64,000 nucleotides of DNA from Euprymna scolopes (taxonomy: Eukaryota): assembly GCA_053919585.1 (NCBI GenBank), contig CM132793.1. One strand, written 5' to 3'. The notes under the pieces were generated by a model. That model did not search any database. It saw nothing but the letters and a program-made list of their open reading frames with translations, and was not told the origin of the DNA. A program made the position numbers and the translations under genes. Shown in pieces: positions 7,655 to 62,000 of the stretch (the first letter of the stretch is position 1; every line of letters starts with the position of its first letter).

Positions 7655-8938
7655 CGAGGGGCGTGCAATAAGTAATGCCCCTGACCCACTTCCAGTTGTC
7701 AGATCTAGCTGAAATTTTGCATGTGCAATGATTTATATCTCTACGGGTTATGTGACAAATTACACTAATTGTAGTTTCTGTTTTACAGGTGTTTGAACTG
7801 AGTCAGGTGTGAAATGGAGCCTGTTGAATGTCGAGCAGTGATCCGGTTTTTGTATTTGAAAGGACGCACACCACAGGAGACTTTTGATGAAATGAAAGAA
7901 ACTTATGGTGATAATGCCCCATCATATAACCTTGTAAAACGCTGGCATCATGAATTCAAACATGGCCGGAAGTCTGTAGAAACACCTCCCAGACCTGATC
8001 GCCCCCTTCTGCCATTGATGAGGCATCTGTCCGTTAAGTTGAGGCTGCCATTTTGGAAGATCGGCGCATTACTATTCGCCAAATAGCCCAAGATGTCAAG
8101 ATTAGTACAGGGTCTGTGGAAACTATCATTCATGACCATTTGTATATGCATAAGTTGTCTGCCAGATGGATTCCCATGTTGCTCACACCATTCCAGAAGC
8201 GAGAACGCGTCGAGTGCTCGAGGATGAATTTGGAGATGTGCCAAGAAGATGAGTCAAAGTTTTTCAAAAGACTGATTACACAGGATGAAACCTGGGTCCA
8301 TCACTATGATCCAGAGACCAAAGCCCAGTCAATGCAGTGGAAGCACTTGGACTCACCACCTCCAAAGAAGACAAGGGTCCAGCCCTCCGCTGGCAAGGTC
8401 ATGCTCACAGTCTTCTGGTACCAGGACGGAGTAATGATGACAGATTTCCTGGCAAAGGGTACCACAATTACAGGAGTCTATTATGCTTCACTTTTGAGGA
8501 AATTAAGGGAAGCTATCAAAATCAAGAGGCGGGGCAAGATCAGCAAAGGTACCCTCCTCCTGCAGGACAACGCTCCGGTCCACAACTCGCATGTCACCAG
8601 ATCCGAAGCACGGGCGTGATGTTATGAAATCCTTTCCCATCCTCCCTACTCTCCTGACCTTGCACCCTCTGACTTTCACCTCTTCCCAGCCATGAAGTTG
8701 TTTTTGAAAGGAAAGCGTTTCCCAGGTGATGCAGTCTTGATTTCTGAAGTCACGTCGTGGTTGGAGGACCAACCCGGAGTGTTCTACAAAAACGGTCTTC
8801 AGAGCTGCATCAAACGATGGGAGAAATGCATAACTTTGGATGGTTCCTATGTAGAGAAAGACTAATAACTGTGCCAAGTTTCGTTGCTCTACTGCTATGG
8901 GAAGTGGGTCAGGGGCATTACTTATTGCATGCCCCTCG
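7655..8938 (+). mobile_element. Full-length mariner DNA transposon, 1284 bp, probably irritans-type
   Basis: 39-bp TIRs (7655-7693 and 8900-8938, one mismatch) CGAGGGGCRTGCAATAAGTAATGCCCCTGACCCACTTCC. TA duplication at 7653-7654 and 8939-8940. Confidence 0.97.
7814..8865 (+). pseudogene. Mariner DD34D transposase, inactivated
   Basis: N-terminal HTH region, then WIPMLL, TQDETW, QDNAPVH and YSPDLAPSD, with 34 codons between the last two catalytic Asp. Frameshift near 8005; stops at 8035-8037 and 8617-8619. Confidence 0.95.
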
Positions 8939-13879: not shown

Positions 13880-15845
13880 CAACTTCTGGCGTATATTGCC
13901 ACTTTGATGTAGGGAGTTACTATCAGGGACATAAGCTACAGGGATACTAAGTAGGGAGTTGGGCAGCAAGATGTCGGTCCACGTTACACTTGAACTTCTG
14001 CACGTCAGTACAGTTGGGGAAGCAGGGACCTGGAATGGAATTCCAAAGTCTAGCGGTTCTGGGGAAGAAACTACTGGAGTAAAAAGATATTTTACATCTA
14101 GGGATCTCTACTGTGTGTGGCTGGGATTTAGCTGCCTGTCGGATTTGTCGAGGGTGTTTACGTCATGGGGGCACAAGTGCTTGCAGTTCGTCAGAGCATT
14201 CACCATTAAAATACATGTAGAACAGGCAGAGGGATGCAACATTTCGTTAATGGGACAGAGGCTGAAGCTTAGATGACAGTTCAGGACCTATCAGGTTGGC
14301 GACTCTCTTTTGAACCTTGTCTAGGAGCGAGAGACTAGTAGCAGATGCACCAGTCCAAATATGACAATACTCTATACGTGGGAGAGTTGTGGCCTTATAG
14401 AGGTACAGGATACTTTCGAGCGTTAGTAGCGTTCTAGCACGGTAGAGAGAACCTACCTTTTTCGCATCGGTCCTGGCAATGCTCTCAATGTAATTGTTCC
14501 AACTCATGTTTCCTGTGAACGTTAGGCCGAGGAGTTTAAAAGAAGTATTTTCAGATAAAGAGTCTTTGGCCATTGCTATTAGTGGTAGAGAAGGTTTCTT
14601 GTCATTGAAGGAAACAAGTTTAGTCTTGGCAGCATTGAATGTGACCATCCATTTTTGTCCCCATTCCACTACAGATTGGAGGTCATCCTCCAGTGTTTCG
14701 GCTTTTTCCTTAGATATGTGTTCATTTGTTTTCCCGTCGTGTCTGTTATAGAGCGTGGTGTCATCAGCATATATACCCATCTCAAAGACAATTTTGTCAG
14801 GGAGGTAATTTATGAATATTAGGAATAATAGAGGTCCAAGGATAGACCCCTAAAACCCCTAGACTCCCGCATTTATATCATATTGTTTAGATGTACGACC
14901 GTCGAGGACAACCTGGATTTTTTCTTGTCTAAAAATGATTTGATTATGTTAAGTATTCGTCCATTGATACTGTATGATCTGATTTTCCTGAGAAGACCTT
15001 CATGCCATACCCTGTCAAAAGCCTTAGATATATCTAGAGATACCGCTCTACCCTCCCCTGCTTTGTCCAGTGAATCGTATATACGTTCAGAGATTACAGT
15101 TAGGATGTCTGCTGTGGAACGGGCTTAAGTCCATATTGTTGGTCGGTGAGAAGTTTAGCATTTGTAAGGTGATGGACTAGAGCTTGGTTAATTATGGACT
15201 CAAATATTTTGGTGAAAATGGGAGGAGGCTAATGGGGCGATAATTTAATGGGTCAGTTCTTTCGCCAGAATTCTTGAGAACTGGTATCACAGAGGCAGTT
15301 TTCCGGCAGTCAGGAAAGCAAGATTCATTAAGGTATTTGTTGTAAAGTTTGGAGAGAACTGAAGCTACTTTGGCGGAGCACTTTTTTAATAGCACAGCCG
15401 AGATAAGATCAGGTTCACATGCTTTTGAAGTGTCAAGATTTTTATGATAGCATGCACTTGAGAAGGGGTGATTTTCCTATCGTCTTCTGTGGCGTCTGTC
15501 CGCAAAGAAAAGTCCGGGAAAGAGTGGTTAGCAGGGTCCAGTGTGGAGTTGAAGGCAAACCGACTGGCAAGTATGTTAGCCTTCTCGGTTGCTGAGCAAA
15601 CAACCTCATGATTGTTGGATAGTGGGGGAATTGTTGATTGCCCATTATTTACTACACTGTTGTAGATTTTCCAGAAATCACGGGTTTCTAATTTCTGTGC
15701 TTTAATGCGTTTTCTTTTTTTTTTTGTATTTTTTTTTTTTGTGGTTTCAGTAAATTCTCTCTTAGCTGTTGCTATTTCTGTTACTTCTGGTTTCTATATA
15801 CTTCTGTCTGTTTGAACTGAACTTATGTCGGTTAAATCTACGGTA
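13880..15845 (-). mobile_element. CR1/Jockey-group LINE ORF2 (RT) remnant, frameshifted
   Basis: NYRPISLL, LDISKAFDRVWH, IYADDTTLY and LQPLSH motifs in order on the minus strand. Confidence 0.9.
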
Positions 15846-18800
15846 CGCATGCTGCCTTTGCGCAAAGACGCTTTCTTGCTCGATTCTCCTTACGTTTACA
15901 GGTTCAGCATATTGGTTATTCCCTGCTTGCAGTGGGCTCATCAAACCCATATCGAAGGTCCCATGCCCTTTCTTCTCCATCTGCCTGCCAATCTTCCCCA
16001 ACCCTTGCTTTAGTTTTGGTATTTGGACTTCCTTTGCTCCCCACTTTTTCTTCCACTTTGAGCACGAATCTGCTCCTCACATTTCAACATTCGGTCCCGT
16101 AACCAAACATGCAGCATATAGGCTTCCTCTAAGGTGCGTGGACTATTCCTTAAGGCCTCTATCTTGTCGTCCTATCCCACAGTGAATCTATCATCGCATC
16201 AACCAGTATGGCCTGTACCACAATTGTGTTATAATACTCTGCTTTTTAGGAATGTGAGGAGTGCTAATCCCGGAACGTGCTTGGCCAGCTCATCAATGTT
16301 TTCCCCGCCAGCCATTTTTAATCGAAACAGCTCCCATGCGGCCTCCCATAACTGTATGCAGTTATTTCGCTGGCATATTCTTTTTTTAACCACCCGCAAA
16401 GTTCAGACCAGGTTATTCCTGCTTATTCCTGAACTATCTTTATAAATGGTGCAAATAAACTCGAAAACTGGTCCCATCGCCGATTCATAGGTCAACGTGA
16501 CCATTTCACAGCCCGTAGACTAATTCTTTTTCTTTTCTATCGTCGTCGGTCAGTCCTTCAGACCAGCAGCACTTATGTTTATTCTCCATATCGGTTTTTC
16601 CATTTCCACTGGAACTTTCTTTACCCCCTCTCATCTTTCTTTATGACATATTCTACAACCTCATCTTGGGAGCCCATCATTTTATCCGACTACTGCTAGT
16701 ATTACCACCCGTATTACATAAGTACTCTGTGCAAAGTTAAATACAAAATTAAAACCATATATAGATAGAGCACAAAACTGCAAAGTGAAGAAGGGAACCA
16801 AAAATTAACCTACTGCCTTCTTGGTTGTCTACTCCCTTTGCTATCTTCTGGTGCTTTTGGCGAGCTAGCATTTGACCATATAATCAATTACCTAATGTCA
16901 GTGGTCTGACTATGCTCTCAAAGTCTCTTGAAAACAGAAATATTTTTCTTTCTCCCTTTTTCTTTCTTTTTTTTTTCTTTCTTTGGAAAAAAACAATTCA
17001 TCGAAGAAAAAAAGCAATGTCTGTCGTATCCTGGTCAAATGTACCACAAGATTGTGGTATCCTGGATGTAACGGCACCAAAAAAGCACCCTCATCATTCA
17101 ACAATATCCAATGAGTGACGTCATCGGATTCGACCGTTCTGGGTCCCTTGTTGCTCGGCGCTCGCTCTGGCGAAGGCTCCGAGTGTTGAAAGTACTGTCC
17201 GGCAAATTACCACTTCTCCTACGGTGCGAAAAGATCGAAGGAGCAAATCCTCTGGCATTGACCACTAAAGTTTGTATAACTGGGGAGGAAAAGTCATTTT
17301 AGCTAAAAGAAGATAGAATAATACTTCGACGATTGGTCTTTTGGGATAAAGTAACAATTATTCGTTGAAAAATCATTCACTCTGATTCTTCACAAGTCTT
17401 AACTAAAGCTCTTAATATTCGTATCTGAACGGCACTCTTTGTGTTGATTTTCAAGTTTAGCGATTTAAACCCTAAGTCTGAAGGTCATTTATTTAACGGC
17501 GTGGAGTCGGCATAAACAAAGAAATACCTCGGCTCGGTCCAGTTTAGTCTTTCTGCCCCCAAAGCTCCCGATGTACCGGCTTATATTGAGCCTGGAAGTC
17601 ATTACTCCGCCCCTCTCCCAACATAATTAAATTCAACAACACCCAGCCGTCTACAATTACCAGCACAAATCCCGATTCTGCAAAACTATGAATGGTCAAC
17701 AGGTATTTAAGTTTGTCGCTTTTTTTTTTTCTATTTTTCACTTCGTCATGCTATCATGAAATGAAGATTCTTCCGCGCTTTTTGAGGTGGTTCCCGAAAC
17801 GAGAAATGTAGTTCCTTAATTTGTATTAAAACAAGTTTTATTTATTACCTTGTAAACGTGAATCATGAGAAAGATTCAGGTAATTCAGTTATCATTCCGC
17901 TTTATCCTCTCAGTTTTGACAAGCAATTCTCACTTTCAGAGAACTTGATCAACGGCGTCTTGTTTCCAATATCGGTCAAAGACCATAATATTCTGATTAT
18001 AACAATAATAAAAAGCAGATATTCAAATCTTCCCCTGAGATTACAAGGCCACCTTTATTGAATAAATTTAACGTGGCTGAATAAAAAGCAATCATATTTT
18101 TTACCAACATCAGACAATTTTTATGTCACAAATCTCCGACAGTGAATTTATTAACAAATCAATATTTCTCTTCCTTTTTCTATATGCCAGAATAACTATA
18201 AAAAAAAAAGACCCCTGGGGGAAAAACAGAATGTTTCGTTATCAATCCCAGTTTTTATGACTTCTATATGCATTTAACACAGTTTCAACTTATTCTTTCC
18301 TTCTTTTTTCTGCCTTTTCATTCCTTCCTTTTCCATTGTCCGAATCTAGATATTTGTCTCTCGGATATGATAGCAACCTTTTGTCTCGTGAGACAGTGGC
18401 GTTCTGCAACTAATCTAGTGCGCTGCGGTATCTGCTGTGGTTATACAGTTTAAACCCAAGATGCAAGCCTAGACATGTGATAAGAGGATCTAGGTTTATC
18501 CAGTTACCAGAGTCCTCCACGAGGCGTTTCAGGTAAAGTCCGATGGAAAGGTAATCCAATACAGTCGTGGTCGCCGGAAAGGTGTTGCTATGATTCACCA
18601 TCCACTTATCGGGAATCTAAACAAGATGTTTGTCAAGTTTTACTCTTTTGTCTTTTCGAAGGTATTTGCCCATATCTAGTGAAAATTTGAAAATATCTCC
18701 AATTATGACGAAAAAAAAAACGGAGCTCGTCACCGTAGTTATGGTTGTAACATATAAACCCTTCTTAACCCGTCAAAATCACCACATTTAGAGCACAACT

Positions 18801-46080: not shown

Positions 46081-46217
46081 TCAACTGCCCAAAGCTGGAG
46101 CAGCAGGGACAGGCAGTATGACAGGGATGTGATAGTACTTGCACAGTTGACGGCGGCATTTTCCTTTGACTGAATCACGGCACACAGTCACCTTGCCATC
46201 CGTCACTTCAACATACT
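46081..46217 (-). CDS. mbl: Muscleblind last coding exon, CCCH zinc finger (E)YVEVTDGKVTVCRDSVKGKCRRQLCKYYHIPVILPVPAAPALGS*
   Basis: Acceptor TTATTTTTTTCAG, phase 1, matching the upstream exon. C-x7-C-x4-C-x3-H with the muscleblind VTVCRD leader. TGA at 46081-46083. Confidence 0.92.
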
Positions 46218-46747: not shown

Positions 46748-47430
46748 ATTTTTTTTTTTTTTTTTTTTTACATAGGCGTCACCACTTATCAAAGCCGATC
46801 GGCCATTCAAGGATAACGGTTAAAGAGTGTAGAGTAGTCAAAAGGACAATATAGTAATCAATAATAATGGAAGTTCGGTAAATTTGTTAACTTAAGTGGA
46901 ACGGCTCATCAGAAACTTGTTCACGTTGGACTTGAAGACAACCATATTATAGACAGCTGGAAAGCAGGAAAACGGAAGACAATTCCACAGGCGTGCAGTT
47001 CAAAGAAAGAAGCTTTGATCATGGAATCTATGTTTAGGTTTAGGCACAGATAAAGAGTGGGGGGAATTATTGATAGTGTTTTCAGCTAGTCTAGTGTTTC
47101 TTGTGAAAGTTTGGCGAGGGGGGACCATAGATTGAAGCTCAGTTGAACACTTTCCATGAAAATAACGATAAAGCAGAGACAAACTCGCAACATCTCTTCT
47201 GTGAGATAGAGGTTGCAGCAAAGAGAAAAGGACATCTCCCACCAGGCCACGAAGTCTATTTTGAACCCTATCAATGCAGGACAAGTCATTTCTAGCAGCT
47301 CCTGCCCATATGTGGCAACAGTATTCCATCCTTGGACGTATCTGGCTCTTATATAGATAGAGAATTGCATCAGCAGTGAGATATCTACTGGATCGATAGA
47401 AGGATCCGACCATTTTTCCAGCGGCCTGGC
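46748..47430 (-). mobile_element. 5'-truncated CR1/Jockey-group LINE in the intron between the two zinc-finger exons
   Basis: LYLYKSQIRPRMEYCCHIW..LQPLSHRRDVASLSLLYRYFHGKCS, with 3' UTR and poly-A (T-run 46748-46769 on +). Same family as 11605-12082. Confidence 0.88.
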
Positions 47431-47917
47431 ATAAAATAAAAACTTAAATCCCTCAGAATGCATTTCTGTTTTTTTAATTTAATTTAAATAAAGGAAGGGG
47501 GTGTTCATAGTTTATAAAAAATGAAAAAGCAAAACATAACTGAAATAAAAATAATACTAGCAGGTAAGTAGTACTAGTTAGTGGACATGTGTTATTTATA
47601 TTTTTGTCTCTCCAAATTACACAAATACCATTTTAAACATTTTAAAGCAAAGTTGATAGGTTAGTAATCATCAAATGTCTGAATAATAACATAAAATAGA
47701 AATATTCATTGGAAATTCTCATGCAATATGTAATAGAGAATAAGTAAGAACAAAGAATGTTAATTACAAAGTTTATTCTCAAGTAATTTTCATTTGAAAA
47801 TGCCTCATAAAAATTGCAATGCATGTAGTTATCATAGAACATATGATGGAATGCAAGCCCCCCCCCCATATCCTCTCTCAAATACAGTTTAAAAAAAAAA
47901 AAAAAAAAAACACTTAC

Positions 47918-48002
47918 CCTCCAACAAATGCACAAACTTGCATTGTGGCCTGTTACATTGGCTAGACTTAAAATCGCGGCACACTCGGAGGGTGTCCAGC
48001 AA
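47918..48002 (-). CDS. mbl: Muscleblind exon, CCCH zinc finger LLDTLRVCRDFKSSQCNRPQCKFVHLLE
   Basis: 85 nt. Polypyrimidine tract plus AAG acceptor, GTAAGT donor, phase 0 to 1. Joins 46217 in frame to form a tandem CCCH pair like the second pair of protostome Mbl. Confidence 0.92.
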
Positions 48003-49652
48003 CTTAAAAAGAAAAAGAAAAAATAATATTAAAATGATATATCATTGAAAAAGCAAGAACATTCACAAACTCAGTTCACCTTGCTTTAATAGTAAATAAT
48101 AAAATTTATTAAAATTACATATAAATTCAAATGTGTGGTACATAAGAATACATATGAACTGCTTCAATTTTAGGTCACATTAATTAAAAGTTTTAGAATT
48201 TGAAGCTAGAAAAATAAATATCAATTTAATTTCTATTTTTAAAACAAAAATAAAACCTGGTAAAAAACAAATAAGATCTTTGAAATAATATTTGCATTGT
48301 ATGTTTAATCACTGATTCATGTGTATCCAAGAATACTAAAGGATGCCAAAGTAGATGATAAAAATGAAGAGACTAATCTAGAATCTGTTGAATAAAGCGT
48401 CCACATGGAATCATGGCAGCATTGGTTACAATCAGTTCTTAATGATAATCATCTGGGGGTTGAATCCTTACTACAGGTGATAATAACTAAGAATAATATA
48501 AAAGTTGCCCAGATAAGGAGAGATATACCTCTGATTTGTATAGCAAACAGAAAGACTAATTTTGAATTTTGTCTTTATTTTTTCTAGTTTTTTTTTTTTT
48601 TTGACTGCTTACTCAAACTCATTTTTTTCTGATTAAACAATGTGGCCCAATAGGTCATGCTTTTTCTAGTATAAATACAAGCATTAATCTTCTTAAGAAA
48701 AAAGTTGACTACTTAATTTTTTTATTATTATTATTCTTAGAAAATGAATGTGGAATAGAAAAGACATAAACAAAACAAAATTGCCCAAGAAAGAATTTTA
48801 ACCAATTTTTTTTCCAAAACTAAAATTAACCTAACAAATAGCAGCTCTGAAATTGAAGAATTGATTATGTAAAAAAAAAATCAAAATTCTTTTCAAACAT
48901 GCAACAATCTGCTTATTATGCATATGCAAAAACAAAAAAAAGTTTGTTAAGTTGTTTAGACATGCTTCTCTATGTAAACATGAAATCCTTCACAAAATGA
49001 AGAGAGCAAAATCAATACAAAGCAAACGCATGGAAAAGTGGTAAAAAATTTTGAATTTTGATAGGCAAGATTCCATCAAATGACATTCTGCAAGAATTTT
49101 TATTCATTCAAACTTAAATGATATAAACACAAAATGAAATAAATATTCACAAACTTCTTTCGAGTCTACAAAATTAAGATTGCTTGAGTGAAATGAGGTT
49201 TTTCTTTAACCAGGAGTTCTCAATACAAAGCACGATTCTAAACACTGGTCTTTTTTCAAAATCGAGTACGGGTTCATTCTTTTACTTTTTACCATTCAAG
49301 ATTTCTGGAGAGAAATGAACGGAAGTCATTGTAAAGATTAAAAAGAAGGGTGTTTTATAGAAGACCAAAAATAACGAGATCATTTACAAATCAAATAAAC
49401 TAATCTAAAAACTAAAAACATAACTTAAAGATCCACATAGAAGACAAAAAAGATAAACATAAGAAATTGTTGCACACTTTATGGAACAAAGAAAGAAGTA
49501 TAAAACTAAAAATGATTGGAACTGGAAAGAATATTGGAAAAAAAATCAAAGTCTGTTTTAAGATTTGGATGCAACTACGAGGAACATAAAGCAAAATGTT
49601 GTAAACGATATGAACAGCAGGATTAATAAGACTGGAGATAGCACTCTACTAC

Positions 49653-49792
49653 CTGGTTGTTCTCATCAGAGTAATTAACACTAGCAGCATTAGTGGAAAG
49701 CGAGGAGGTGGTGGTGCTGGCAGTGGTGATGGTGGTGTTGTTGTTGGCATTGGCCATCAATGTAGGTTGGTTGGGATTGACGATCATCGGCA
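49653..49792 (-). CDS. mbl: Muscleblind linker exon xPMIVNPNQPTLMANANNNTTITTASTTTSSLSTNAASVNYSDENNQ (alternative internal acceptor at 49680)
   Basis: Acceptor CAACAG is the first AG after a 223-nt AG-free zone. Donor CAG|GTAGTA is phase 0 and joins LLDTL in frame. The acceptor choice is inferred. Confidence 0.7.
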
Positions 49793-49794
49793 CT

Positions 49795-50017
49795 GTTGGG
49801 TTTTTCATGGCAGTCAAAGAGGAAGAAGGGTCAGCGGTAGAGGTAGTAGTAGTAGGAGGTGACAGCAGCAGCAGCAGCAGCAGCAGCAGCCCGAAGTAAC
49901 AGCAGCAGGCGGTAACAGTGGTTTTTAAGTGCAGATGAAGCACAGGTTGCATGCAGAGTGGTACAATTTGTGCACAGGAGTGGGTCAAGGCATGAAAGAA
50001 GAGATGAATAGCAAATC
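49795..50017 (-). promoter_or_regulatory. AG-exclusion zone with YGCY cluster including (CTG)9; putative MBNL-binding splicing element
   Basis: No AG on the minus strand for 223 nt. About 16 YGCY motifs by hand count. Pyrimidine tract and CTTGAC branch-like motif near 49985-50010. Confidence 0.6.
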
Positions 50018-51399
50018 CTCATTTGTTTATTGCGATAAGCAAACATCCTGATTCTTTTTGGGATGAGGAGGGATATTGTTTTAATTCTGACCATTGTCTT
50101 CATCAATGTCGTAAAAGCGTTGATATCAATGTTGATGAAAACAATAATTGGAAGAAAAACAAAATCAAAAGAAAAAAAAAAAAATAATGTAAATAATCCA
50201 GATTCTTATAAAGCAACTCTGTAAAAATCTGCAATGATCTTTTTTTTGGCTGCTGCTGATTGATTTTGTACAAATCATAAATTTTTTTAAGTTTCTTTCA
50301 AGACAAAGTAGATTTTCGTTTTTAACACAAATTTTTTTTTTTTTTTCAAAATGGATTCAGTAACAAACAACCATCAATCGTATCAATTTCTCGCTAAAAA
50401 TAACTGCAATTTAAGTTTTCTAATTTGTTTAATTACTTTTGGAAAGAATGCTTATTTATTCCATCATGCATATTATTACTACTTCAAAAAGTATTAAAAA
50501 CTAAAGATTTTAAATTACTTAAATGAGGAGTGAGAGGATGTTTGTAAAATAACAAAAGAAAATAAAAATTCTTAAAGTTTTTGGAATTCAGAAACAACTA
50601 AGCAAGCCAAATAATGGTTTTTCTTTTAAATATTAAACTCAACATATAATTAGAAAAATATTTATCTGAATAATTAGAGAAAATGAATACAGTCATTAAT
50701 AAACAGCCGTCGATCATATCAATTTCTAGCTAAAAATATTGCATCATAAGTATTTAGTTGCTCGAATGGATGTAGAAAGAGATTTTAATCCCAAAAGTTG
50801 AATGGATTTTGTTATGGCAATTAAAAAGGCAAAGCAAAAATGGTAAAAAAGCTTATCAGAAAAAAAAACATTTATCAGTCAATAAAGCAATGGAAGCAAT
50901 TAAACCTTGTAAGATCTTAAAAAAGACATGTAATTATTACTTTCACTATGTCTTTGACCTCAACATCCCAAGGTTATAGTGTGAATGTAAAATTATCAAT
51001 GATATAAAAATTAAGGTACAGCTTCTTTTCAAATAATAAAGCCATAAAGATTAGCAGGATGTTGAAGCAACTAAAAAGTTGGTTACAATATTTCTGGAAT
51101 CATTTAAGCAACTTTCCAAATGCTAATAAAGCAATAGAAAGGTAAGGAAAAATAGGTGGGAAAAAAGCCAGTTTTTGATAATTGCTTTCCAGAAAGTTTT
51201 AAGTTTCCTTCAATGGAAACATTGTAGTTAAAACTAAGAAAAAACTGACCTCAATGTCAAAGAGAAACGTAAACCAAATAAGAACATAAGTCGCAAGACT
51301 GCATACCTCTGCTTGACAATATAAGAATGAGCCAAAGTTGTATTTGGGTCTTCTCCATATTGCATGAGATATTCTGACGATGAAAATGTTGATAATTAA

Positions 51400-58751: not shown

Positions 58752-58793
58752 AAGTAAAATAAGGTTGAATTTCATTTAATTTTGTTGAAGAAT
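58752..58793 (-). CDS. mbl: 42-nt microexon copy B, xSSTKLNEIQPYFT
   Basis: CTTTCCAG acceptor, GTGAGT donor, phase 1-1. Paralog of 63055-63096. Assignment to mbl rests on strand, position and phase. Confidence 0.75.
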
Positions 58794-59059: not shown

Positions 59060-62000
59060 CCATCCATTGTATGGCTATCCATTCAGGAAACTATCTATTG
59101 GATAGCCGTCGACTTGCAAAAGCCATCCATTATATGGCCATCTATTCTCAAAAGCCATCCATTGTACAGCAATCTATAACAACACACCACTGTATGGTCA
59201 TCTATTCATGACAAACATCCATTGTATGGACATCTATTCTCCAAAGTCATCTATTGTATGGATGTCTAATCTACAAAGCCATTCTTTGTATGGTCATCTA
59301 TTTGTGAAAACCATTCATTGTATAACCATCTATTCACTATAAACATCGATTATATGGCTGTCTTATCGAAAGCCATCCATTGTATGGTCGTATATTGTCC
59401 AATGTCATCCATTATATGGGTATATATTTGCAATAACCATCCATTGTATGGCCATTAATTTGCTATGACCATCCATCGTATGACCGTCTATTCATGATAA
59501 CCATCCATTGTATAACTATCTCTTTGTGGTAACCATCCATTTTATGACCGTCTCTTTGTGGTAACCATCTATTATATGACCGTCTCTTTGTGGTAACCAT
59601 CCATTATATGACCGTCTCTTTGTGGTAACCATCCATTATATGACCGTCTCTTTGTGGTAACCATCCATTATATGACCGTCTCTTTGTGGTAACAATCCAT
59701 TATATGACCGTCTCTTTGTGGTAACCATCCATTATATGACCGTCTCTTTGTGGTAACCATCCATTATATGACCGTCTCTTTGTGGTAACCATCCATTATA
59801 TGACCGTCTCTTTGTGGTAACCATCCATTATATGACCGTCTCTTTGTGGTAACCATCCATTATATGACCGTCTCTTTGTGGTAACCATCCATTATATGAC
59901 CGTCTCTTTGTGGTAACCATCCATTATATGACCGTCTCTTTGTGGTAACCATCCATTATATGACCGTCTCTTTGTGGTAACCATCCATTATATGACCGTC
60001 TCTTTGTGGTAACCATCCATTATATGACCGTCTCTTTGTGGTAACCATCCATTATATGACCGTCTCTATGTGGTAACCATCCATTATATGGCCGTCTCTT
60101 TGTGGTAATCATCCATTATATGACCGTCTCTTTGTGGTAACCATCCATTATATGACCGTCTCTTTGTGGTAACCATCCATTATATGACCGTCTCTTTGTG
60201 GTAACCATCCATTATATGACCGTCTCTTTGTGGTAACCATCCATTATATGACCGTCTCTTTGTGGTAACCATCCATTATATGACCGTCTCTTTGTGGTAA
60301 CCATCCATTATATGACCGTCTCTTTGTGGTAACCATCCATTATATGACCGTCTCTTTGTGGTAACCATCCATTATATGACCGTCTCTTTGTGGTAACCAT
60401 CCATTATATGACCGTCTCTTTGTGGTAACCATCCATTATATGACCGTCTCTATGTGGTAACCATCCATTATATGGCCGTCTCTTTGTGGTAACCATCCAT
60501 TATATGACGTCTCTTTGTGGTAACCATCCATTATATGACCGTCTCTTTGTGGTAACCATCCATTATATGACCGTCTCTTTGTGGTAACCATCCATTATAT
60601 GACCGTCTCTTTGTGGTAACCATCCATTATATGACCGTCTCTTTGTGGTAACCATCCATTATATGACCGTCTCTTTGTGGTAACCCATCCATTATATGAC
60701 GTCTCTTTGTGGTAACCATCTATTATATGACCGTCTCTTTGTGGTAACCATCCATTATATGACCGTCTCTTTGTGGTAACCATCCATTATATGACCGTCT
60801 CTTTGTGGTAACCATCCATTATATGACCGTCTCTTTGTGGTAACCATCCATTATATGGCCGTCTCTTTGTGGTAATCATCCATTATATGGCCGTCTCTTT
60901 GTGGTAACCATCCATTATATGACCGTCTCTTTGTGGTAACCATCCATTATATGACCGTCTCTTTGGGATAACCGTCCATTGTATGACCGTCTCTTTGGGA
61001 TAACCATCCATTGTATGACTGTCTCTTTGTGGTAACCATCCATGGTATAACCGTCTCTTTGTGGTAACCATCCATTATATGACCGTCTCTTTGTGGTAAC
61101 CATTCATTATATGACCGTCTCTTTGTGGTAACCATCCATTATATGACCGTCTCTTTGTGGTAACCATCCATTATATGACCGTCTCTTTGTGATAACAATC
61201 CATTGTATAACTGTCTCTTTGTGGTAACCATCCATTGTATGATTGTCTATTCATGTTAACCATTCATTGTATGACCGTCTCTTCATGGTAACCATCCATT
61301 GTATGACCGTCTACTCATGATAACCATCCATTGTATAACTATCTCTTTGTGGTAACCATCTATTATATGACCATCTCTTTGTCGTAACCATCCATTGTAT
61401 GACCATCTATTTGTGATAACCATTCATTGTATAACTGTCTCTTTGTGGTAACCATCCATTATATGACCATCTCTTTGCGGTAACCATCCATTGTATGACC
61501 GTCTATTCATGATAACCATCCATTGTATAACTGTCTCTTTGTGGTAACCATCCATTATATGACCATCTCTTTGTGGTAACCATCCATTGTATGATTGTCT
61601 ATTCATGATAACCATCCAAGGTATGACCGTCACTTCATGGTAACCATTCATTGTATGCCTATTTTTGATAACCATCCATTGTATGACCGTCTATTCATGA
61701 TAACCACCCATTGTATGACCATCTCTTTGTGGTAACGATCCATTGTATGACCGTCTCTTCATGGTAACCATCTATTATATGACCAACTCTTCAGTGGTAA
61801 CCATTCATTATATGACCATCTCTTTGAGGTAACCATCCATTATATAACTGTCTAATTGTGATAACCATCCATTGTATGGCTGTCTATTCTCCTAAGCCAT
61901 CCATTCTCTATGGCTGTTTATCTGCAACAATGATTGGTTGTATGGCTGTCTATTTGTAACACCCATCCATTGTATGATCATCTATTCTTGAAGCCATCTA

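What the first reader, a model, noticed from the sequence alone, without database searches (positions are those of the whole stretch)
49653..50017. 223-nt AG-exclusion zone packed with YGCY and (CUG)9 ahead of the exon leading into ZnF3/4: candidate autoregulation
Seen: on the gene's sense strand there is no AG between 50017 and 49795. The stretch holds about 16 YGCY motifs including (CTG)9. The pyrimidine tract and branch-like CTTGAC lie about 190 nt from the acceptor, and the sequence next to the AG is not pyrimidine-rich. Established: human MBNL1 represses its own exon 5 through YGCY motifs between a distant branch point and the 3' splice site, inside a long AG-exclusion zone. Inference: the same architecture occurs at a different exon of an invertebrate mbl, as a convergent or ancient feedback loop, with an endogenous CUG tract in its own pre-mRNA.
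Basis: partly seen in the sequence, partly recalled or inferred. Interest (0 to 1): 0.78.

Follow-up and report, generated by a model that had tools for sequence, protein, structure and literature searches.

The report
Ancient AG-free splicing-control zone in muscleblind
The AG-free, CUG-rich stretch is the end of the intron before a small, mostly skipped exon of a cephalopod muscleblind gene. The same odd intron end occurs in limpet, oyster, worm, spider and dragonfly, so it looks like an old splicing switch, though control by Muscleblind itself is still untested.

Summary
On the minus strand 50017-49795 has no AG (P = 0.0003 given its composition) and holds 16 YGCY motifs, 10 of them in (CTG)9 and (CTG)3.

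Protein homology shows that 49792-49653 is a real 140-nt exon. It is the conserved exon that precedes the C-terminal zinc-finger pair of protostome Muscleblind. Homology stops exactly at the AG at 49794/49793, so the zone is intronic.

The pair is not ZnF3/4. It is a third pair, and the true ZnF3/4 lie upstream of the window. The exon is 2 mod 3 and puts that pair in frame. Every cephalopod transcript I could find skips it, and polyA reads give zero depth over it.

I fetched the homologous exon in five other protostomes. All have a long AG-free zone (115-873 nt, against a control median of 37). Five of six have UGCAUG in it. CTG runs recur in three phyla.

This supports an ancient regulated 3' splice region. 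It fits repression by Muscleblind, and at least as well repression by Rbfox.

Autoregulation remains inference.

Other notes of this scan on the same window (s1-295508, s1-295713, s1-295745) cover neighbouring exons of this gene; none covers this zone.

The parts
49795..50017 (-). 223-nt AG-free zone, the 3' end of the intron upstream of the 140-nt exon
   Evidence: 0 AG against 6.3 expected, P = 0.0003. The distal 181 nt alone give P = 0.0026.
49984..49988 (-). Distal branch-like UUGAC (A at 49985, about -193), preceded by CAUGCC at 49994-49989
   Evidence: A TTGAC also lies near the 5' side of the zone in Lottia (-90) and the spider (-100). This is motif evidence only.
49950..49955 (-). UGCAUG (Rbfox-type hexamer) at -163
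   Evidence: It is present in the zone of 5 of 6 species. P(at least 5 of 6 by chance) = 1.4e-5.
49929..49942 (-). Block UGCUUCAUCUGCAC shared by the three molluscs
   Evidence: Lottia has TGCTTCACCTGCAC and Pinctada has TGCTTGATCATCTGCAC. Window core against the Lottia zone gives z = 6.4.
49900..49908 (-). (CUG)3
49863..49889 (-). (CUG)9, which supplies 8 overlapping YGCY
   Evidence: The tract is 3 nt longer in the close relative X12 (contig gap 75 nt against 72).
49816..49834 (-). Proximal CUGAC (A at 49831, -39) followed by a 15-nt uninterrupted pyrimidine tract
   Evidence: sequence reading. This is the canonical branch-site and tract arrangement.
49793..49794 (-). Acceptor AG of the 140-nt exon; the 22 nt before it are purine- and A-rich
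   Evidence: Homology to other species starts directly after it.
49653..49792 (-). 140-nt cassette exon (phase 1 to 0, length 2 mod 3) encoding (L)PMIVNPNQ...NAASVNYSDENNQ
   Evidence: BLASTP against the scorpion segment gives E = 5e-07. The homologous exon is 2 mod 3 in all 6 species.
49651..49652 (-). Donor GU in CAG|GUAGUA, weak at +4 to +6
   Evidence: CAG|GTA followed by non-consensus +4 to +6 is seen in all six species.
49352..50058 (-). Block almost invariant between the window species and a close relative (contig of run X12)
   Evidence: There is 1 substitution in 635 compared nt against 4.2% in neighbouring intron (Fisher P = 1.8e-9).
47918..48002 (-). 85-nt exon encoding the first finger of the C-terminal pair (LLDTLRVCRDFKSSQCNRPQCKFVHLLE)
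46081..46217 (-). Start of the terminal exon: second finger (YVEVTDGKVTVCRDSVKGKCRRQLCKYYH) and stop TGA at 46083-46081
58752..58793 (-). Second 42-nt exon. In all known transcripts it is spliced directly to 48002, skipping the 140-nt exon

Best explanation
SHOWN. The gene is a cephalopod muscleblind on the minus strand. 49792-49653 is a conserved 140-nt cassette exon. Its length (2 mod 3) shifts the frame so that the next two exons (48002-47918 and 46217-46081) are read as a third, C-terminal CCCH finger pair. When it is skipped, as in every transcript found, the protein ends FAGHPPSVPRF*. The 223 nt upstream are intronic and specifically lack AG. The homologous exon in a limpet, a pearl oyster, an annelid, a spider and a dragonfly is also preceded by an unusually long AG-free zone. 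That zone usually carries UGCAUG about 45-70 nt from the exon. In three phyla it also carries a run of CTG.

INFERRED. This is an old splicing-control region. The 3' splice site is weak, with purine-rich sequence next to the AG. Its recognition depends on scanning from an upstream branch site through a zone kept free of AG. Proteins bound in that zone would block use of the site and keep the exon skipped. The candidates are Muscleblind on (CUG)9, (CUG)3 and the other YGCY, and Rbfox on UGCAUG. If Muscleblind is one of them, the gene limits production of its own three-pair (or extra-pair) isoform, as MBNL1 does for exon 5. I put about 0.85 on the structural part and about 0.4 on Muscleblind autoregulation specifically.
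For: - Exon homology and boundary: (E = 5e-07).
- Frame logic. In L001 the finger ORF is +1 relative to the main ORF. The carried T plus TG gives Leu, matching 'LPMVV' in bivalves and 'LPMM' in the scorpion.
- AG-specific depletion.
- AG-free zones of 223, 177, 157, 140, 115 and 873 nt against 13 control acceptors in the same loci (median 37, maximum 96; complete separation, exact P = 3.7e-5).
- UGCAUG in 5 of 6 zones (P = 1.4e-5).
- Three of the only four (CTG)>=4 runs in 197 kb of the six loci (393 kb counting both strands) lie in these zones (P = 3e-7 to 2.5e-6).
- Colinear sequence blocks shared by the three molluscs.
- Near-invariance of 49352-50058 against a relative.
- The exon is skipped wherever Mbl mRNA is seen.
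- The MBNL1 exon 5 precedent, and the rule that upstream MBNL binding causes skipping: PMC7901844, PMC4176163.
Against: - No read, contig or database protein shows the exon included in a cephalopod, so its regulation has not been observed.
- A canonical CUGAC plus 15-nt pyrimidine tract at -42 to -24 could serve as an ordinary proximal branch site.
- Outside the CTG runs, YGCY is at the level composition predicts. It is not enriched in Lottia, Pinctada or the spider.
- The CTG runs sit at different places relative to UGCAUG in the three phyla, so they are not one inherited element.
- Folding of the zone is no better than shuffles (z = -0.65).
- Only one species per lineage was sampled.
Confidence: 0.55

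Rival explanations
1. Rbfox-centred tissue switch. The conserved core is UGCAUG and the neighbouring blocks, and Rbfox bound upstream represses the exon outside certain cells. The CTG runs are microsatellites that arise easily in a UGC/CUG-rich pyrimidine context and add little. Muscleblind does not regulate itself here.
For: UGCAUG is the most conserved motif (5 of 6). YGCY is enriched in only 3 of 6 species. CTG run positions differ between phyla. The run length varies between close relatives.
Against: Three of the four CTG runs in all six loci fall in these zones, which is hard to explain without selection or a very local mutational bias. (CUG)n is a high-affinity MBNL ligand (PMC4176163). 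The two readings can both be true.
Confidence: 0.25
2. Ordinary intron end. The branch point is the proximal CUGAC at -42 with its pyrimidine tract. The AG-free stretch and the CTG microsatellite are by-products of pyrimidine-rich composition and have no regulatory role.
For: The canonical branch site and tract lie close to the AG. In Capitella and the spider the absence of AG is compatible with composition (P = 0.15 and 0.22). No significant structure was found.
Against: AG depletion beyond composition in the window species, Lottia, Pinctada and Ladona (P = 0.0003, 0.0017, 0.0033 and <0.0003), while GA, AA and GG are present. The distal 181 nt alone give P = 0.0026. All six zones are longer than every control. 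There is near-invariance against a relative.
Confidence: 0.1
3. Relic exon. Cephalopods no longer use the 140-nt exon or the in-frame finger pair. The conserved block serves another purpose, for example an intronic enhancer or a signal for the skipping isoform.
For: Zero polyA reads over the exon while the finger exons are covered. All seven cephalopod isoforms that reach the 85-nt finger exon read the pair out of frame. No database protein holds the exon.
Against: The exon frame is open and keeps the conserved NAxSVNY.D.N.Q end. The 72-codon finger frame is intact here and in Octopus bimaculoides (P0266, 82% identity, all Cys and His kept), although it would be untranslated 3' sequence in the skipping isoform.
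Confidence: 0.08
4. The AG-free stretch is coding. The exon starts at 50017 and encodes a low-complexity segment with poly-Leu, since the frame is open from 50018 to 49653.
For: A 122-codon stop-free frame runs continuously into the exon.
Against: All five stop triplets in the zone avoiding one frame has chance 0.13. No protein matches that ORF. Homology in six species begins only after the AG at 49793. Joined to the 42-nt exon, the long form would start with T+GA, a stop. RNA contigs over it are colinear with the genome and unspliced.
Confidence: 0.02

Closest known systems
Human/mouse MBNL1 exon 5 autoregulation (Gates et al. 2011, as described in PMC7901844 and PMC4176163)
   Same: A cassette exon in a muscleblind-family gene. 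A long AG-exclusion zone. A weak 3' splice site without an adjacent pyrimidine tract. YGCY motifs between a possible distant branch site and the AG. The exon and its flanks are unusually conserved. The exon is skipped when the protein is present.
   Different: It is a different exon, the one before a C-terminal finger pair and not the 54-nt NLS exon. Here the exon is a frame switch (2 mod 3). The motif cluster is mainly a pure (CUG)9 repeat. A proximal canonical branch site also exists. A conserved UGCAUG is present. No branch-point, binding or dose-response data exist.
[quoted passage not shown]
   Same: An AG-free interval of more than 100 nt before an alternative exon, taken as a signature of a far-distal branch point.
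   Different: Here the signature is conserved at one orthologous exon across molluscs, an annelid and arthropods, and reaches 873 nt in a dragonfly.
Rbfox-repressed exons with an upstream UGCAUG
   Same: A conserved UGCAUG within about 45-165 nt upstream of an alternative exon.
   Different: Rbfox binding and its effect were not tested. The spider lacks the motif.
Drosophila mbl alternative isoforms with one or two tandem finger motifs (PMC3315501)
   Same: One mbl gene makes proteins with different numbers of CCCH pairs by alternative splicing.
   Different: That paper describes the second pair, the ZnF3/4 homologue. The pair here is the further C-terminal LLDTLPVC... pair, reached through a frame-switch exon. 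I found no paper describing its regulation.

Membership tests
MBNL1-exon-5-type autoregulated exon | Alternative cassette exon of a muscleblind/MBNL gene | tested here: inconclusive
   The exon is orthologous to a coding exon of other protostome Mbl isoforms, and skipping is documented. Inclusion was never observed in this species.
MBNL1-exon-5-type autoregulated exon | Long AG-exclusion zone upstream of the exon | tested here: met
   223 nt, P = 0.0003. Conserved in 6 of 6 species against controls.
MBNL1-exon-5-type autoregulated exon | Experimentally distant branch point (-141 in MBNL1) | not testable with these tools
   Only motifs are available: UUGAC at -196, CUGAC at -42, UUGAC at -25. 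No lariat data.
MBNL1-exon-5-type autoregulated exon | Cluster of YGCY motifs between branch point and 3' splice site | tested here: met
   16 YGCY against 5.2 expected. Ten come from two CTG runs. If the proximal branch site is used, the cluster lies upstream of it.
MBNL1-exon-5-type autoregulated exon | Exon inclusion responds to MBNL/Mbl dose; direct binding | not testable with these tools
   No CLIP, minigene or knock-down data are available.
MBNL1-exon-5-type autoregulated exon | Strong conservation of the exon and flanking intron | tested here: met
   1 substitution in 635 nt against a relative, compared with 4.2% nearby. Colinear blocks are shared among three mollusc classes.
Rbfox-regulated exon | Conserved (U)GCAUG within about 200 nt of the exon | tested here: met
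   The window species (-163), Lottia (-64), Pinctada (-71), Capitella (-44) and Ladona (-63) have it; the spider does not. P = 1.4e-5.
Coding sequence (zone as exon) | Homologous protein segment, or spliced transcript covering it | tested here: not met
   No hit for the 122-aa ORF. Homology starts after the AG. Only unspliced colinear contigs cover it.
   Octopus sinensis isoform P0158 carries that pair upstream of the 42-nt exons. The window pair matches the extra C-terminal pair of six-finger proteins P0001 and P0002.

The most novel reading that the evidence does not exclude
An ancestral protostome, perhaps bilaterian, feedback switch. Muscleblind, together with Rbfox, binds inside a conserved AG-exclusion zone. 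That zone repeatedly evolves endogenous CUG repeats as a built-in Muscleblind sensor. Binding represses the frame-switch exon that adds an extra zinc-finger pair, so protein dose sets the protein's own domain make-up. The vertebrate autoregulated 36-nt exon 7, which by my recollection lies in the homologous intron before the VPMVHG exon, would be a descendant of the same control region.
Probability: 0.3. Interest if true: 0.78.

Novelty: new member of a known kind. Interest (0 to 1): 0.62.

Why it matters
Muscleblind proteins are the factors sequestered by CUG repeats in myotonic dystrophy. Here a natural CUG repeat sits in the protein's own pre-mRNA. It lies inside an AG-free zone that has been kept for several hundred million years, in front of an exon that decides whether an extra RNA-binding finger pair is made. 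If Muscleblind binds there, self-regulation through an AG-exclusion zone is ancient and not a vertebrate invention. Invertebrates would then offer simple systems for studying distant-branch-point repression and physiological CUG-repeat sensing. The finding also draws attention to a third finger pair for which I found no description in the searched literature.

Tried and rejected
- The 122-aa ORF across the zone had no database match.
- NCBI Octopus vulgaris and Argonauta gene ranges are over 100 kb, so no DNA was returned.
- O. bimaculoides P0266 and the RefSeq isoforms P0161, P0192 and P0097 are not on record for locus retrieval. No second cephalopod genome could therefore be compared beyond the contigs of the close relative X12. 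The one-triplet CTG length difference comes from that relative.
- A global MAFFT alignment of the four zones was uninformative because of indels.
- I tested whether the conserved UGCAUG is a remnant Cys-Met codon pair of a lost microexon. It is in frame in only 2 of 5 species, so I dropped the idea.
- RNA folding of the zone gave z = -0.65, so no stable structure is claimed.
- Rfam returned only noise matches far below threshold.
- The block 49352-50058 is single-copy in the window, so it is not a repeat.
- YCAY (Nova) motifs number about 9 against about 6 expected by my own count. I did not pursue this.
- Joints reported by read laying around 50155-50187 are low-complexity artefacts.

Full report
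OBSERVATION

On the minus strand the nearest AG dinucleotides are at 50019/50018 and 49794/49793. The AG-free run is therefore 223 nt, 50017-49795. It is the longest such run on that strand outside satellites and N gaps.

Its composition (A41 C77 G34 T71) predicts about 6 AG, and none is present. Mononucleotide shuffles lose all AG in only 0.03% of trials. GA (5), AA (12) and GG (2) do occur, so the absence is specific to AG.

There are exactly 16 YGCY motifs, against 5.2 +/- 2.0 in shuffles. Ten lie in (CTG)9 (49889-49863) and (CTG)3 (49908-49900). The six others are about what composition predicts.

CTTGAC sits at 49989-49984. The last 20 nt before the AG are only 45% pyrimidine.

This is a textbook branch-site and tract unit about 40 nt from the AG.

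WHAT THE GENE IS

Earlier notes of this scan call the gene a cephalopod muscleblind. I confirmed this.

Two CCCH fingers are encoded on the minus strand, in an 85-nt exon (48002-47918) and at the start of the terminal exon (46217 onward, stop at 46083-46081).

A profile-free search with the second finger returned an 81-aa protein of this species (P0008). Its transcript contig is L001. L001 carries a 292-aa Mbl ORF with ZnF1/2 and two copies of YSSTKLNEIQPYFT. It maps to the two 42-nt exons (63096-63055 and 58793-58752), which join directly to 48002.

In that transcript the finger pair is in the +1 frame and the protein ends FAGHPPSVPRF*. Every cephalopod isoform retrieved that reaches the 85-nt finger exon ends this way: five further Logan or JGI transcripts and the O. 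vulgaris protein. Two O. sinensis isoforms instead stop in the exon near 55.6-55.7 kb, and the Argonauta model is partial.

O. sinensis isoform X3 carries the true ZnF3/4 (DRLEVCREF...VTVCMDY...) upstream of the 42-nt exons, which places it outside this window. The window's pair instead matches the extra C-terminal pair of six-finger proteins such as P0001 and P0002, and the LLDTLPVC... pair found in many protostomes. The label 'ZnF3/4' is therefore wrong; this is a third pair.

THE EXON IS REAL AND THE ZONE IS INTRONIC

In bivalves, a gastropod, a scorpion and insects, the residues just before LLDTLPVC follow a shared pattern. It starts (L)P[MLV][VIM]V.P, continues with an Ala/Ser/Thr-rich stretch, and ends NAxSVNY[FS]D.N.Q.

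The window exon 49792-49653 encodes (L)PMIVNPNQ...STNAASVNYSDENNQ. It aligns over its whole length with these segments and with the exons I located in five genomes. BLASTP of its second half against the scorpion segment gives E = 5e-07.

The 42-nt exon ends with one carried T, and T+TG gives Leu. This reproduces the 'LPM' seen in bivalves and the scorpion. The exon ends in phase 0 and runs in frame into LLDTLRVC.

Its length is 140 nt, which is 2 mod 3. That is exactly what is needed to bring the pair into frame. The homologous exon is also 2 mod 3 in all six species (140, 101, 107, 116, 86 and 62 nt). All have a CAG|GTA donor that is weak at +4 to +6.

Homology stops at the AG at 49794/49793. 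The open frame that continues upstream has several marks against it:
- It has no database match.
- It would begin with T+GA, a stop, if spliced at 50017.
- Its openness is not significant: five stop triplets avoiding one frame has chance 0.13.

EXPRESSION

In a polyA RNA-seq run (X21, raw reads) the two finger exons have depth of about 4-12. Bins 49249-50036 have essentially none.

Oligo-dT RNA contigs (X2) and a contig from a close relative (X12) cover the stretch only as genome-colinear, unspliced pieces. Their depth is near that of other intronic contigs.

No protein of 67-213 aa or 160-511 aa in the 5.8-billion-cluster collection contains the exon. Inclusion has therefore not been observed.

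The finger frame is nevertheless intact here and in O. bimaculoides (P0266, 82% identity, all Cys and His kept). That is hard to explain unless an in-frame isoform is made somewhere.

CONSERVATION

Against the relative's contig there is 1 substitution in 635 compared nt across 49352-50058. Neighbouring intron shows 70 in 1651 nt (Fisher P = 1.8e-9). The CTG tract there is one triplet longer.

I then fetched the orthologous loci of five species:
- Lottia (L002)
- Capitella (L003)
- the spider Trichonephila (L004)
- Pinctada (L005)
- the dragonfly Ladona (L006)

In each I located the homologous exon.

AG-free zones. Including the window species, the zone before the exon is 223, 177, 157, 140, 115 and 873 nt. 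Thirteen control acceptors in the same loci have a median of 37 and a maximum of 96. The separation is complete (exact P = 3.7e-5).

AG depletion. It exceeds composition in the window species, Lottia, Pinctada and Ladona. In Ladona 34 AG are expected and none is seen, alongside 28 GA. In Capitella and the spider it is compatible with composition.

UGCAUG. It lies in the zone in five of six species: at -44 to -71 in four, and at -163 here, where about 100 nt of CTG and TAC repeats and the proximal tract are inserted. The probability of at least 5 of 6 by chance is 1.4e-5.

Shared blocks. The three molluscs share colinear blocks: CATG[CT]C, then YCTGCATG, then TGCTT(C/G)A..YCTGCAC. The supporting scores are:
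- Window core against the Lottia zone gives z = 6.4, and it is the best window in the 20-kb Lottia locus.
- Lottia against Pinctada gives z = 3.7.

Pyrimidine tracts. In Pinctada and Ladona the sequence next to the AG is purine-rich and the only good pyrimidine tracts lie 85-150 nt upstream. This is the clearest case for a distant branch point.

YGCY and CTG runs. YGCY is enriched here, in Capitella and in Ladona, but not in Lottia, Pinctada or the spider. Only four (CTG)>=4 runs exist in the 197 kb of the six loci (393 kb counting both strands). All are on the mbl sense strand, and three lie in these zones (P = 3e-7 to 2.5e-6). They sit on different sides of UGCAUG, so they probably arose independently.

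MECHANISM

Shown:
- a frame-switch cassette exon;
- an intronic zone specifically depleted of AG;
- conservation of that architecture across protostomes;
- a conserved UGCAUG;
- recurrent CUG runs;
- predominant skipping.

Inferred: the 3' splice site is found by scanning from an upstream branch site, and proteins bound in the zone prevent this. Muscleblind on the CUG/YGCY tract is a good candidate. About one MBNL1 binds per (CUG)4, and upstream binding gives skipping (PMC4176163). MBNL1 exon 5 works this way (PMC7901844). Rbfox on UGCAUG is at least as well supported by conservation.

In this species the distal 181 nt are still AG-depleted on their own (P = 0.0026). This argues that upstream branch sites matter. 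The proximal CUGAC and its tract could nevertheless do the job, in which case the CUG tract would sit just upstream of the branch site. That is still a repressive position in known MBNL targets.

No stable RNA structure and no Rfam family is involved.

COMPARISON AND NOVELTY

The closest known system is MBNL1 exon 5 autoregulation. It shares the AG-exclusion zone, the weak acceptor, the YGCY motifs and the conserved flanks.

The differences are these:
- It is a different exon, and it acts as a frame switch for an extra finger pair.
- The motif cluster is a pure CUG repeat.
- A proximal branch site is also present.
- A conserved UGCAUG is present.
- There are no functional data.

I found no paper on cephalopod mbl, on this finger pair's regulation or on this zone. 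I class it as a new member of a known kind.

From memory only and untested, the exon resembles vertebrate MBNL1 'VPMVHG...ANQ' exon 8. That would place the vertebrate autoregulated exon 7 in the homologous intron.

VERDICT

The structural reading and the 'ancient' alternative are well supported. Muscleblind autoregulation and the distant branch point remain plausible inferences.

Noticed in passing
L006:8110-8982 (Ladona fulva): There are 873 nt without a single AG on the mbl sense strand, directly upstream of the homologous 62-nt exon. 34 AG are expected, while GA occurs 28 times, AA 85 and GG 34. This is an extreme AG-exclusion zone.
   Followed up: partly
window 48002-47918 and 46217-46081 (minus): A third, C-terminal CCCH finger pair (LLDTLxVC...) is conserved across molluscs, annelids and arthropods. 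In every cephalopod transcript found that reaches these exons it is read out of frame (protein ends FAGHPPSVPRF*). I found no literature on this pair.
   Followed up: partly
window 55440-55429 (minus): This is the only other (CTG)>=4 run in all six loci, also on the mbl sense strand. It lies in the GC-rich 55.3-55.7 kb region that holds the exon where Octopus sinensis isoforms X3 and X12 terminate.
   Followed up: no
window 49352-49652 (minus): The 300 nt downstream of the exon's donor are as invariant against the close relative as the exon itself. No UGCAUG or YGCY enrichment is seen there, and their role is unknown.
   Followed up: partly
window 50155-50187: A low-complexity A-rich tract (T-rich on the gene's strand) draws very high read depth and produces false joints in read mapping.
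   Followed up: no
window 46900-47480: A non-LTR retrotransposon fragment (ORF 47000-47443 on the minus strand) lies in the intron between the two finger exons. Its depth of 300-500 in polyA RNA indicates an expressed multi-copy element.
   Followed up: no
window 59373-61618: A tandem-repeat satellite lies in the intron between the twin 42-nt exons (repeated ORFs such as ...RRSYNGWLPQRDGHIMDGYHKET...). It is 2246 nt AG-free on the plus strand.
   Followed up: no
L001 and P0151-P0160: The window species differs from Octopus and Argonauta Mbl at positions those two share (for example PPPHVEV against PPSHVEV). It may therefore be a decapodiform rather than an octopod.
   Followed up: no
window 7800-8900 and 14250-16100: A mariner-like transposase ORF and a reverse-transcriptase ORF (transposon remnants) lie downstream of the gene's 3' end.
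   Followed up: no
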